DNA of 63,347 nucleotides, counting the filler, from Octopus bimaculoides (taxonomy: Eukaryota), in NCBI RefSeq assembly GCF_001194135.2. It is 5 parts of 5 records of this genome, joined end to end, with 100 filler letters (N's around TTAATTAATTAA, not from the genome) between each part and the next. Parts side by side here need not be neighbours in the genome. Positions count along the whole stretch, not along the records: positions 17,066 to 37,451 come from NC_068982.1; 4 more parts are not named here. One strand, given 5' to 3'. Position 1 is the stretch's first letter; each line of letters starts with the position of its first letter. A model generated the notes under the pieces. It searched no databases and was not told where the DNA came from. It saw nothing but the letters and a program-made list of their open reading frames with translations. This document shows, in pieces, positions 19,965 through 20,485 of this stretch. A program made the translations under genes and the position numbers.

Positions 19965-20485
19965 ACTTATGAGTATTTGTATACTGCCAACTTAACGTGA
20001 CAGTCCCAATAAGGGAATATACTACTGCTGTTTAGCCCTAGGAAGCCAGACCTATTAGGCCTTGACACACTTTCTGTGCCCTTATCTTTAGGAAGGGAGA
20101 CAAACTCCTCCAGCCAGCCCAGCCAGCCCAGCCTGCATTCAGGGACATGTTTCTGAGTCTTTGCTCGTCATCAGCCTGAAGTAGCATGACCGGCTAGCTG
20201 AAGAAATCTGTCTCAGCTTCGTAAGGATATACTATTTCAGTGAAATACTATCCACTGGCTGGGCTGACTGGAGGAGTTTGTCTCCCCTTCGTAAGGATAA
20301 GGGCACAGAAAGTGTGTCAAGGCCTAATAGGAAGCGGTCTGGCTTCCTAGGGCTAAACAGCTGTAGTATATTCCCTTATTGGGACTGTCACGTTATGTTG
20401 GTAGTATACAACTACTTTATCGCATCACTACTGCTTAAGTCTCTCTGAGAGATTTAGAAATTCGTTATTTCTAACTTATGAGTAT
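19965..20485 (-). mobile_element. foldback element with approx. 150-bp inverted arms, central hammerhead motif and 12-bp direct flanks
   Basis: Arms about 19977-20130 and 20266-20412 are near-perfect reverse complements; acttatgagtat at 19965-19976 and 20474-20485. Confidence 0.85.
20138..20180 (-). ncRNA. minimal type-I hammerhead ribozyme motif (GUC site)
   Basis: UUCAGG-CUGAUGA-C-GAG caaaga CUC-A-GAAA-CAUG-UC-CCUGAA: perfect 6-bp stem I, palindromic ACAUGU stem III; C.A mismatch at the base of stem II. Confidence 0.7.

What the first reader, a model, noticed from the sequence alone, without database searches (positions are those of the whole stretch)
19965..20485. Foldback element with a hammerhead in its loop and a 12-bp target duplication
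Seen: approx. 150-bp near-perfect inverted arms enclose an approx. 135-bp spacer containing a second, unrelated HHR (6-bp perfect stem I, GUC triplet, palindromic ACAUGU). acttatgagtat flanks the element. It looks like a MITE, but the long TSD and ribozyme point instead to retrotransposition with 5' inversion. Inference: a second PLE-dependent ribozyme family that repeat pipelines would misclassify as a DNA transposon.
Basis: partly seen in the sequence, partly recalled or inferred. Interest (0 to 1): 0.72.

Follow-up and report, generated by a model that had tools for sequence, protein, structure and literature searches.

The report
Hammerhead-bearing Penelope-type inverted retroelement insertion
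This is a 497-bp dead insertion, probably in an octopus genome, of a small hammerhead-ribozyme-bearing retroelement that landed as two head-to-head partial copies, as Penelope-like elements do; it is a known kind of element, not a new class.

Summary
Inverted arms lie at 19977-20126 and 20255-20411 (6 substitutions, 2 indels). They enclose 128 nt that carry, on the minus strand, a canonical metazoan type-I hammerhead (20131-20189). A perfect 12-bp duplication, ACTTATGAGTAT, bounds the whole element.

Two details change the reading. The right arm is not terminal: a 62-nt tail separates it from the duplication. The hammerhead also has a non-canonical C·A at positions 10.1-11.1.

Five features match the published signature of Penelope-like element (PLE) insertions:
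- head-to-head copies with different 5' truncation;
- a one-sided 3' tail;
- a 23-nt palindrome beside the inverted junction;
- a short target duplication;
- a ribozyme in the longer copy.

The element does not fit a MITE. The best reading is reverse transcription primed from both nicked target strands on a PLE terminal repeat or retrozyme-like RNA.

I found no second copy and no PLE partner, so family-level claims stay untested. The searches covered the 20-kb piece, about 190 kb of fetched DNA (about 170 kb from Octopus assemblies), the protein databases and the metagenome collection. This is a new member of a known kind, of moderate to low interest.

The parts
19965..19976 (.). Left copy of the 12-bp target-site duplication, ACTTATGAGTAT. 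Its last 5 nt (AGTAT) resemble the element sequence AGTAG at the point where the tail begins, so there is microhomology at the priming site.
19977..20254 (-). Long copy, 278 nt, sense on the minus strand. Its 3' end abuts the left duplication (reverse-transcription start site 1, after ...GUAUACAA). It contains the palindrome, the 5' strand of the extended helix I, the hammerhead and the sequence shared with the other arm.
   Evidence: Orientation follows from the hammerhead strand.
19977..20126 (.). Left inverted-repeat arm, 150 nt: the part of the long copy that the short copy shares.
20131..20189 (-). Canonical metazoan type-I hammerhead. From 5' to 3': 3-bp outer stem, UAC bulge, 6-bp helix I, CUGAUGA, helix II (C·A mismatch plus 3 bp) with loop CAAAGA, GAAAC, AU, GUC, then cleavage predicted between 20144 and 20143, then helix I, U, and the outer stem.
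20192..20229 (-). Segment X. On the sense RNA it pairs with the start of the shared region (about 20083-20119). Using the short copy as partner, 35 of 38 positions pair. This extends helix I into a long stem that encloses the ribozyme.
   Evidence: D1, 79% identity to 20262-20299; folds. By my reading of the sequences, 5 of the 8 differences are G·U on the sense strand.
20228..20250 (.). 23-nt palindrome (9 of 10 bp, 3-nt loop) at the 5' end of the long copy, 4 nt from the inverted junction at 20254|20255.
20255..20411 (+). Short copy, 157 nt, sense on the plus strand. It is 5'-truncated inside the (GCTGG)n run, 8-17 nt downstream of the position equivalent to the cleavage site, and it lacks the hammerhead. 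This is the right inverted-repeat arm.
20412..20473 (+). One-sided 3' tail of 62 nt. It continues the short copy beyond start site 1 to start site 2, after ...UUAUUUCUA. Its ACUACUGCU (20427-20435) is complementary to AGCAGUAGU of the shared region (20021-20029 in the long copy).
20474..20485 (.). Right copy of the 12-bp target-site duplication.

Best explanation
This is a dead-on-arrival insertion of a non-coding, hammerhead-bearing retroelement RNA. The RNA was either the terminal repeat (pLTR) region of a Penelope-like element (PLE) or a retrozyme-like non-autonomous derivative of one. It was integrated by PLE-type reverse transcription primed from both strands of the target.

Shown by the sequence:
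- Two copies of the same about 150-nt 3' region lie head to head, with 5' ends meeting at 20254|20255 and 3' ends facing outwards.
- The minus-strand copy runs 278 nt upstream and includes the ribozyme. The plus-strand copy stops after 157 nt, inside a (GCTGG)n run.
- The plus-strand copy starts 62 nt further 3' on the template than the other, which produces a one-sided tail.
- A 23-nt palindrome sits next to the inverted junction.
- A 12-bp target duplication flanks everything.
- The element has 46% G+C in a 33% background.

Inferred by analogy with the in-vitro behaviour of the Anolis PLE PAc and with PLE anatomy in genomes:
- A GIY-YIG endonuclease/reverse transcriptase nicked the two strands 12 bp apart.
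- Each 3'-OH primed cDNA synthesis internally on the RNA, at one of two alternative start sites. A TACT microhomology marks site 1.
- The two cDNAs were joined in the middle and filled in.

Consequences. Only one hammerhead was captured. Its helix III is 2 bp with a palindromic ACAUGU, a design that needs a second ribozyme copy to form an active dimer. Its 10.1-11.1 pair is C·A. The locus therefore cannot process itself into a unit-length or circular RNA, and it is decaying neutrally.
For: 1. A real canonical type-I hammerhead, on one strand only. The invariant U after helix I and the outer stem, neither imposed by my search pattern, are both present.
2. Head-to-head geometry and the one-sided tail. 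[quoted passage not shown] It also matches 'inverted 5'-truncated copy ... [quoted passage not shown]
3. The PAc protein nicks and extends both strands and starts reverse transcription at two internal sites whose spacing corresponds to the tail. Its hammerhead lies roughly 90 nt upstream of those sites (PMC11167929). Here the cleavage site lies 167 and 229 nt upstream of the two ends.
4. Only 1 of the 6 arm-to-arm differences is G·U-compatible on the sense strand, so the arms look like a DNA-level duplicate. In the older 38-bp stem around the ribozyme, 5 of 8 differences are G·U, which looks like RNA-level constraint (and my reading of the sequences).
5. The 12-bp duplication is far from chance.
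6. The element's frames have no Pfam match and no protein homologue. No tRNA was found in 19000-21000.
7. Monomeric retrozyme derivatives and homology between PLE terminal repeats and retrozymes are documented (bioRxiv 10.64898/2026.07.22.740005).
Against: - This is a single locus. I found no second copy, so variable versus fixed arm length, tail use and duplication length were never tested.
- No PLE RT/GIY-YIG reading frame lies in the 20-kb piece, and no terminal-repeat sequence was available for comparison.
- The tail is 62 nt, against the 30-40 nt usually reported.
- The hammerhead is of the canonical kind that the literature assigns to non-LTR retrozymes, not the minimal kind typical of metazoan PLE terminal repeats (PMC4209133, PMC7229834).
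- The palindrome lies next to the junction, not at the symmetry centre of the foldback.
- Rfam does not call the ribozyme at its gathering threshold.
- The C·A at 10.1-11.1 would need two transversions to derive from G-C, so the source family itself may carry an atypical, possibly inactive core.
Confidence: 0.6

Rival explanations
1. The foldback was inherited, not made at this insertion. In this reading the whole 497 nt is one simple retrocopy of a master RNA that already contained the inverted duplication. That master could be an earlier head-to-head insertion that became a source gene, or a retrozyme whose rod-like RNA structure is seen as 'arms'.
For: A type-I hammerhead joins the rest of its RNA through helix I, so retrozyme RNAs are highly self-paired (PMC7229834). 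Here a 38-bp stem already encloses the ribozyme. With one copy, the junction cannot be shown to be insertion-specific.
Against: The arms are 96% identical, and only 1 of their 6 differences is G·U-compatible on the sense strand (2 of 6 on the other), unlike the inner stem. The inner partner (segment X) would then be a redundant second complement of the same 38 nt. A near-perfect 150-bp duplex is unlike the imperfect rods of known retrozymes.
Confidence: 0.15
2. The element was mobilised by a LINE (non-LTR) machinery with twin priming, so it is a SINE-like hammerhead element comparable to Sm-alpha and Sj-alpha of schistosomes.
For: From my own knowledge, a 12-bp duplication falls in the typical LINE/SINE range and 5' inversions are known for LINE-1. 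SINE-like hammerhead retroposons exist (PMC2770079).
Against: There is no poly(A) or simple-repeat 3' end and no tRNA-like head. From my own knowledge, twin priming on one RNA gives non-overlapping segments, whereas here 150 nt are present in both orientations. A one-sided tail and a junction palindrome are described for PLEs, not for LINEs (PMC8557442, PMC3846280).
Confidence: 0.1
3. It is a MITE or foldback DNA transposon whose internal sequence happens to contain a hammerhead-like motif.
For: There are long inverted arms. A possible 4-bp TTAT lies next to both arm ends (read directly from the sequences).
Against: The inverted repeat is 62 nt away from the right-hand 12-bp duplication, and the true termini (TTGTATAC... 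and ...TTATTTCTA) are unrelated. From my own knowledge, no DNA-transposon superfamily makes 12-bp duplications. A 4-bp TTAT in AT-rich DNA is expected by chance at a rate of about 5% by my estimate. The hammerhead is far from chance.
Confidence: 0.07
4. It is an assembly artefact or a chance hairpin with a chance ribozyme-like motif.
For: PLE inverted structures are known to disturb short-read assemblies (PMC8557442). The scaffold carries N gaps.
Against: The arms differ by 6 substitutions and two indels, whereas I would expect an artefactual palindrome to be perfect. The structure is framed by a perfect duplication in unique sequence. The chance expectation for the motif is below 1 in 200 per 19 kb.
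Confidence: 0.03

Closest known systems
Inverted or solitary pseudo-LTR structures of endonuclease-containing Penelope-like elements, for example Pen2a_Av of Adineta vaga (PMC3846280, PMC8557442)
   Same: Head-to-head inverted copy that is shorter than its partner. Optional tail at the 3' end of only one of the inverted copies. Palindrome at the junction or at the 5' end of the repeat. Short target duplication (8-10 bp there, 12 bp here). Heavy 5' truncation. Hammerhead located in the terminal repeat.
   Different: No RT/GIY-YIG reading frame and no direct repeat pair at this locus. The tail is 62 nt rather than about 31-40 nt. The hammerhead is canonical (helix I of 6 bp, helix II of 4 positions, loop CAAAGA) rather than the minimal PLE variant. 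Homology to a PLE terminal repeat could not be tested.
Metazoan non-LTR retrozymes and their monomeric derivatives (PMC7229834; bioRxiv 10.64898/2026.07.22.740005)
   Same: Canonical type-I hammerhead with a short palindromic helix III. Non-coding. Size in the same range: at least 340 nt of unique sense sequence, against consensus lengths of 51-972 bp. G+C below 50%. Duplications longer than 4 bp when present. Strongly self-paired RNA around helix I. Proposed origin from, and dependence on, PLEs.
   Different: Retrozymes are defined by tandem units, each with a ribozyme, and by circular RNA products. Here there is one ribozyme, no tandem repeat, and an inverted partial copy instead. No unit closure is detectable between the tail and the 5' part.
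[quoted passage not shown]
   Same: Dispersed short retroposon that carries a canonical type-I hammerhead. From memory, the schistosome ribozyme has the same UAC/U bulge and a similar CAAAUA loop.
   Different: Copies of that family are picked up as tRNA-Gln-like and classed as SINEs (PMC2770079). Here no tRNA-like part is found and the insertion anatomy is of PLE type.
LINE-1 twin-priming inversions (from memory: Ostertag and Kazazian 2001)
   Same: Both nicked strands prime reverse transcription, which gives an inverted 5' part and a target duplication of 10-20 bp.
   Different: The L1 products consist of adjacent, non-overlapping segments with a poly(A) tail. Here the same 150 nt are present in both orientations and there is no poly(A).
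MITEs and foldback DNA transposons
   Same: Long inverted arms, small size, non-coding.
   Different: The inverted repeat is not terminal on one side, the duplication is 12 bp, a ribozyme lies inside, and there is a strand-specific RNA-level stem.

Membership tests
Hammerhead ribozyme, canonical metazoan type I | Conserved core: CUGANGA ... GAAA ... UH at the cleavage site | tested here: met
   CUGAUGA, GAAA and GUC are all present on the minus strand, 20180..20138.
Hammerhead ribozyme, canonical metazoan type I | Three helices in type-I topology: helix I open and 6 bp, helix II 4 bp, helix III 1-2 bp with a small palindromic loop (PMC4209133) | tested here: met
   Helix I pairs 6 of 6, followed by a UAC/U bulge and a 3-bp outer stem. 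Helix II pairs 3 of 4. Helix III is A-U and C-G with loop AU (ACAUGU). The model R1 scores it 45.2 bits, E = 1e-10.
Hammerhead ribozyme, canonical metazoan type I | Conserved G10.1-C11.1 base pair | tested here: not met
   Here the pair is C10.1·A11.1, flagged as non-standard by both models. The reference set has G-C in 12 of 13 and G-U in 1 of 13.
Hammerhead ribozyme, canonical metazoan type I | Reaches the Rfam gathering score of a hammerhead family | tested here: not met
   No hit at E <= 10 when 20 kb or 651 nt were searched. HH9 scores 22.9 bits against a gathering score of 52 when only 81 nt were searched.
Hammerhead ribozyme, canonical metazoan type I | Self-cleavage | not testable with these tools
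   This needs in-vitro transcription of monomeric and dimeric constructs.
Penelope-like element insertion (terminal-repeat structure) | Head-to-head inverted, 5'-truncated copy next to a longer copy | tested here: met
   A 278-nt minus-strand copy and a 157-nt plus-strand copy meet at 20254|20255. Criterion taken from PMC3846280 and PMC8557442.
Penelope-like element insertion (terminal-repeat structure) | Short 3' extension (tail) present at one end only | tested here: met
   A 62-nt extension (20412-20473) on the right copy only. It is longer than the 30-40 nt reported.
Penelope-like element insertion (terminal-repeat structure) | Palindrome at the inverted junction or at the 5' end of the terminal repeat | tested here: met
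   A 23-nt palindrome at 20228-20250, 4 nt from the junction.
Penelope-like element insertion (terminal-repeat structure) | Short target-site duplication | tested here: met
   12 bp, perfect. Published examples are 8-10 bp (PMC3846280).
Penelope-like element insertion (terminal-repeat structure) | RT plus GIY-YIG reading frame, or sequence homology to the terminal repeat of an autonomous PLE in the same genome | not testable with these tools
   The stop-free frames of at least 55 aa in the piece show only mariner-like coding; six selected frames were scanned against Pfam, with Mos1-type HTH matches only. Neither the source genome nor a repeat library could be searched.
Metazoan non-LTR retrozyme | Tandem repeats of a 170-400-nt unit, each with a type-I hammerhead | tested here: not met
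   There is a single hammerhead in the 20-kb piece, no tandem array at the locus, and no overlap between the tail and the 5' part. At best this is a monomeric derivative.
Metazoan non-LTR retrozyme | Expressed as unit-length linear and circular RNA | not testable with these tools
   No transcriptome data are available here.
MITE / foldback DNA transposon | Terminal inverted repeats that abut the target-site duplication at both ends | tested here: not met
   The right arm ends 62 nt before the duplication, and the two termini are unrelated.
MITE / foldback DNA transposon | Many copies with the same termini and a duplication of fixed length | not testable with these tools
   No other copy was retrievable.

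The most novel reading that the evidence does not exclude
The locus may be one member of an undescribed cephalopod family of solitary, non-tandem, hammerhead-bearing parasites of Penelope-like elements. Such a family would combine a canonical retrozyme-type ribozyme, carrying a family-specific non-G-C pair at 10.1-11.1, with the insertion footprints specific to PLEs: priming from both strands, two alternative reverse-transcription start sites, and a one-sided tail. If that pattern were seen across many copies, it would be direct evidence from insertion footprints that PLE enzymes mobilise canonical-hammerhead retrozymes. So far that link rests on co-occurrence and on homology with PLE terminal repeats.
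Probability: 0.3. Interest if true: 0.5.

Novelty: new member of a known kind. Interest (0 to 1): 0.33.

Why it matters
The locus is a clean single example of a canonical, retrozyme-type hammerhead inside an insertion that carries all the structural hallmarks of Penelope-like element integration. That fits the recently proposed idea that animal retrozymes are non-autonomous PLE derivatives. It also suggests a simple genome-wide test of that idea: tail use, inverted partners and duplication lengths across copies.

In practice it is a reminder that PLE-type head-to-head insertions can look like MITEs. The locus itself is probably inert.

Tried and rejected
- Rfam on the whole piece and on 651 nt gave only microRNA-like hits caused by microsatellites and the hairpin itself, such as mir-584 and MIR8742. 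I reject these as artefacts of the foldback.
- Other copies in the piece: none.
- Protein-level searches with an 87-aa open frame of the arm, and with all six frames joined: no hit. Pfam on the frames: nothing. The arms are therefore not coding. The only ATG-led frame near the 3' end stops inside the tail, unlike the reading-frame start seen in PAc and A. vaga terminal repeats.
- Exact 24-mers from the arms in the metagenome, viral and prokaryotic genome collections: none.
- Look-ups of window reading frames in the assembly index: not on record.
- About 190 kb fetched around mariner-like genes, of which about 170 kb comes from O. bimaculoides and O. sinensis assemblies and 20 kb from an unidentified ENA contig: no copy of the element. 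No hammerhead by my descriptor in the first 145 kb.
- Joined flanks (the reconstructed empty site) against the first 145 kb: no match.
- Full-text search for the ribozyme sequence: none.
- Test for a circular or tandem unit by looking for overlap between the tail and the 5' part: not significant, p = 0.24.
- Search for analogous foldbacks among 45 metagenome loci with canonical hammerheads: none clearly comparable.
- A weak hammerhead-like hit in O. bimaculoides locus L003 (18 bits) has a 49-nt helix II insert and I treat it as chance.
- tRNA-derived SINE: no tRNA found.

Full report
WHAT IS THERE

The piece is AT-rich (33% G+C), full of microsatellites and has N gaps.

Two inverted arms lie at 19977-20126 and 20255-20411. 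They are 150 and 157 nt long and differ by 6 substitutions and two indels. They enclose 128 nt.

A perfect 12-bp direct repeat, ACTTATGAGTAT, lies at 19965-19976 and 20474-20485. In a sliding test of the same geometry over the whole piece, 7 of 3308 windows had such a link. I did not inspect those seven.

The element has 46% G+C, so it stands out from its surroundings.

The right arm does not reach the right-hand repeat. Between them lie 62 nt (20412-20473) that have no counterpart on the left. The true ends of the element, TTGTATAC... and ...TTATTTCTA, are not inverted repeats of each other.

THE RIBOZYME

On the minus strand, 20180..20138 reads UUCAGG CUGAUGA CGAG-CAAAGA-CUCA GAAAC-AU-GUC CCUGAA. 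The features are:
- helix I of six perfect pairs, continued by a UAC/U bulge and a 3-bp outer stem;
- helix II of 3 bp plus a C·A at its base, with loop CAAAGA;
- helix III of A-U and C-G around AU, giving the palindrome ACAUGU;
- cleavage predicted after C17 (20144).

This is the architecture given for canonical metazoan type-I hammerheads: helix I of 6 bp, helix II of 4 bp, helix III of 1-2 bp with a small palindromic loop (PMC4209133).

Evidence that the motif is not chance:
- My descriptor found it once in the piece and never in 200 random 19-kb sequences. A more relaxed version found nothing in 145 kb of Octopus DNA.
- Rfam misses it when 20 kb or 651 nt are searched. Given only 81 nt, it aligns the site end to end with Hammerhead_HH9 at 22.9 bits, below the gathering score of 52.
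- I collected canonical type-I hammerheads from metagenome contigs with a generic pattern, which gave 45 loci. From 13 clean, distinct ones I built a covariance model. In the piece it finds only this site, at 45.2 bits and E = 1e-10, with the next hit at 10.4 bits.

That score needs context. Training sequences score 70-82 bits, independent true hammerheads 50-66, and sequences that share the search pattern but lack clear helices 32-42. About 20 of the conserved bases were imposed by a pattern I derived from this candidate. The independent support is therefore the pairing of helices I, II, III and the outer stem, plus the U after helix I. That U is invariant in the reference set although the pattern did not impose it.

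The one clear defect is C10.1·A11.1. The reference set has G-C in 12 of 13 and G-U in 1 of 13, and the literature calls this pair highly conserved (PMC4209133). Deriving C·A from G-C needs two transversions. That is unlikely in a copy whose arms differ at 4% of aligned positions. The source family more probably had C-G (a CpG, one transition from C·A) or U-A at this position. That step is inference.

READING THE FOLDBACK

With the ribozyme fixing the sense strand, the element resolves into two copies of the same sequence placed head to head.
- The left copy (minus strand, 20254 to 19977, 278 nt) contains, from 5' to 3': a 23-nt palindrome (20228-20250), a 38-nt segment X (20192-20229), the hammerhead, a short (GCUGG)n run, and the 150 nt shared with the other arm.
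- The right copy (plus strand, 20255 to 20473) begins inside the (GCTGG)n run, so it lacks the ribozyme. It runs through the shared 157 nt and continues 62 nt further.

Both 3' ends face outwards and abut the duplication. At the left end the last bases of the duplication resemble the element sequence at the exact point where the tail begins (AGTAT against AGTAG). That is a microhomology at the priming site.

Segment X is 79% identical to the inner end of the right arm. On the sense RNA it is therefore complementary to the start of the shared region. Using the short copy as partner, 35 of 38 positions pair, and 5 of the 8 DNA-level differences are G·U on the ribozyme strand (my reading of the sequences). 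The folds agree.

By contrast, only 1 of the 6 substitutions between the two big arms is G·U-compatible on the sense strand (2 of 6 on the other strand). My conclusion is that the inner stem is a property of the RNA: helix I extended into a long stem, as in retrozyme and viroid-like RNAs. The big arms are a recent DNA-level duplicate.

COMPARISON WITH PUBLISHED ANATOMY

Penelope-like elements (PLEs) insert with heavy 5' truncation. They often have an inverted 5'-truncated copy at the 5' end, and a 30-40-bp tail present at one end only (PMC8557442).

In Adineta vaga the typical insert ends in an inverted terminal repeat that is shorter than its partner. [quoted passage not shown] Head-to-head is the commonest arrangement (PMC3846280).

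The purified Anolis PLE protein nicks and extends both DNA strands. It starts reverse transcription at two internal sites whose spacing corresponds to the tail, and its hammerhead lies about 90 nt upstream of them (PMC11167929). Hammerheads sit in PLE terminal repeats (PMC4209133).

Every one of these features has a counterpart here. The differences are a tail of 62 nt and cleavage-site-to-end distances of 167 and 229 nt.

The ribozyme itself is of the canonical kind that the literature assigns to non-LTR retrozymes rather than the minimal PLE variant (PMC7229834). A 2026 preprint argues that retrozymes derive from PLE terminal repeats and documents dispersed monomeric derivatives (10.64898/2026.07.22.740005).

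MECHANISM PROPOSED

A PLE enzyme nicked the target strands 12 bp apart. Each 3' end primed cDNA synthesis on a hammerhead-bearing RNA, one at each of two alternative start sites. One cDNA ran 278 nt, to the palindrome, which may be near the 5' end of the RNA. The other ran 157 nt. The two were joined head to head, and repair produced the duplication.

The right copy's 5' end maps 8-17 nt downstream of the cleavage-site equivalent; the repeat run makes the register ambiguous. That is near, but not at, the end expected for a self-cleaved template, and I do not build on it.

With one ribozyme of a dimer-dependent design and a mismatched 10.1-11.1 pair, the locus should be inert.

All mechanistic steps are inferred by analogy. 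Only the anatomy is shown.

WHAT COULD NOT BE DONE

No second copy of the element was found in any of these:
- the piece itself;
- protein databases, searched with translated frames;
- metagenome, viral or prokaryotic collections;
- about 190 kb fetched around mariner-like genes, about 170 kb of it from Octopus assemblies and 20 kb from an unidentified ENA contig.

The host is probably an octopod. A mariner fragment has its best named relatives in Octopus. A SINE-like repeat at about 19265-19650 recurs in O. bimaculoides and O. sinensis loci at 74-90% identity.

So does the search for a PLE partner.

VERDICT

The retroelement reading is preferred over a MITE. The specific '5' inversion' wording needs correcting to 'two overlapping head-to-head copies with a one-sided tail', which is the known PLE signature. 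This is a new member of a known kind. The interest lies mainly in the pairing of a canonical retrozyme-type hammerhead with PLE-type insertion footprints, and that should be tested genome-wide.

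Noticed in passing
window 19265-19650: A SINE-like interspersed repeat about 300 bp upstream of the element. It has several copies, in both orientations, in the fetched O. bimaculoides and O. sinensis loci at 74-90% identity. This suggests that the window comes from an octopod.
   Followed up: partly
window 28639-29265 (-) and about 21982-22300 (-): Two decayed mariner/Mos1-type transposase fragments with an HTH_48 domain. The first is 84% identical at DNA level to a copy in O. bimaculoides (L001) and 87% identical to one in an ENA contig (L052). 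The second abuts an N gap.
   Followed up: partly
window about 29690-30320: A second, unrelated foldback. Its arms are about 300 bp, 80-89% complementary and almost abut around position 30012. They contain (CTT)n and (ATT)n runs and mirrored ORF-like stretches (NKxDEDKYPSIxNN). Rfam reports it as a sub-threshold MIR860-like hairpin. It has no hammerhead. The region matches several places in the Octopus loci.
   Followed up: no
L017, L021, L026, L032, L045, L050 (metagenome contigs): Contigs of 1.0-2.5 kb whose ends repeat each other (127 nt at 100% in L026, L032 and L050; 129-193 nt at 98-99% in the others). This implies circular or tandem units of about 0.9-1.4 kb. Each unit carries a high-scoring canonical type-I hammerhead (70-82 bits) with ACGUGU or GCGCGU helix III palindromes.
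   Followed up: no
L008 3028-3250, L040 1302-1520, L036 842-1059, L020 1708-1887: Solitary copies of a hammerhead-bearing unit of about 220 bp in metagenome contigs. They share a 3' end, and one copy (L020) is 5'-truncated. They look like dispersed retrozyme monomers.
   Followed up: partly
window 20110-20133: A short (CCAGC)n / (GCTGG)n run lies directly 3' of the hammerhead on the sense strand. The shorter copy is truncated inside it, so the exact junction register is ambiguous by one repeat unit.
   Followed up: partly
window 20021-20029 and 20427-20435: AGCAGUAGU in the shared region is perfectly complementary to ACUACUGCU in the tail. On the template RNA this 9-bp stem would bracket the first reverse-transcription start site. 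It recalls the stem-loop at the PAc start sites.
   Followed up: no
L003 12732-12814 (-): A weak hammerhead-like match in O. bimaculoides (18 bits, E = 0.09). It has CUGAUGA, GAAAC, GUC and a 5-bp helix I, but a 49-nt helix II insert. It is probably chance.
   Followed up: partly
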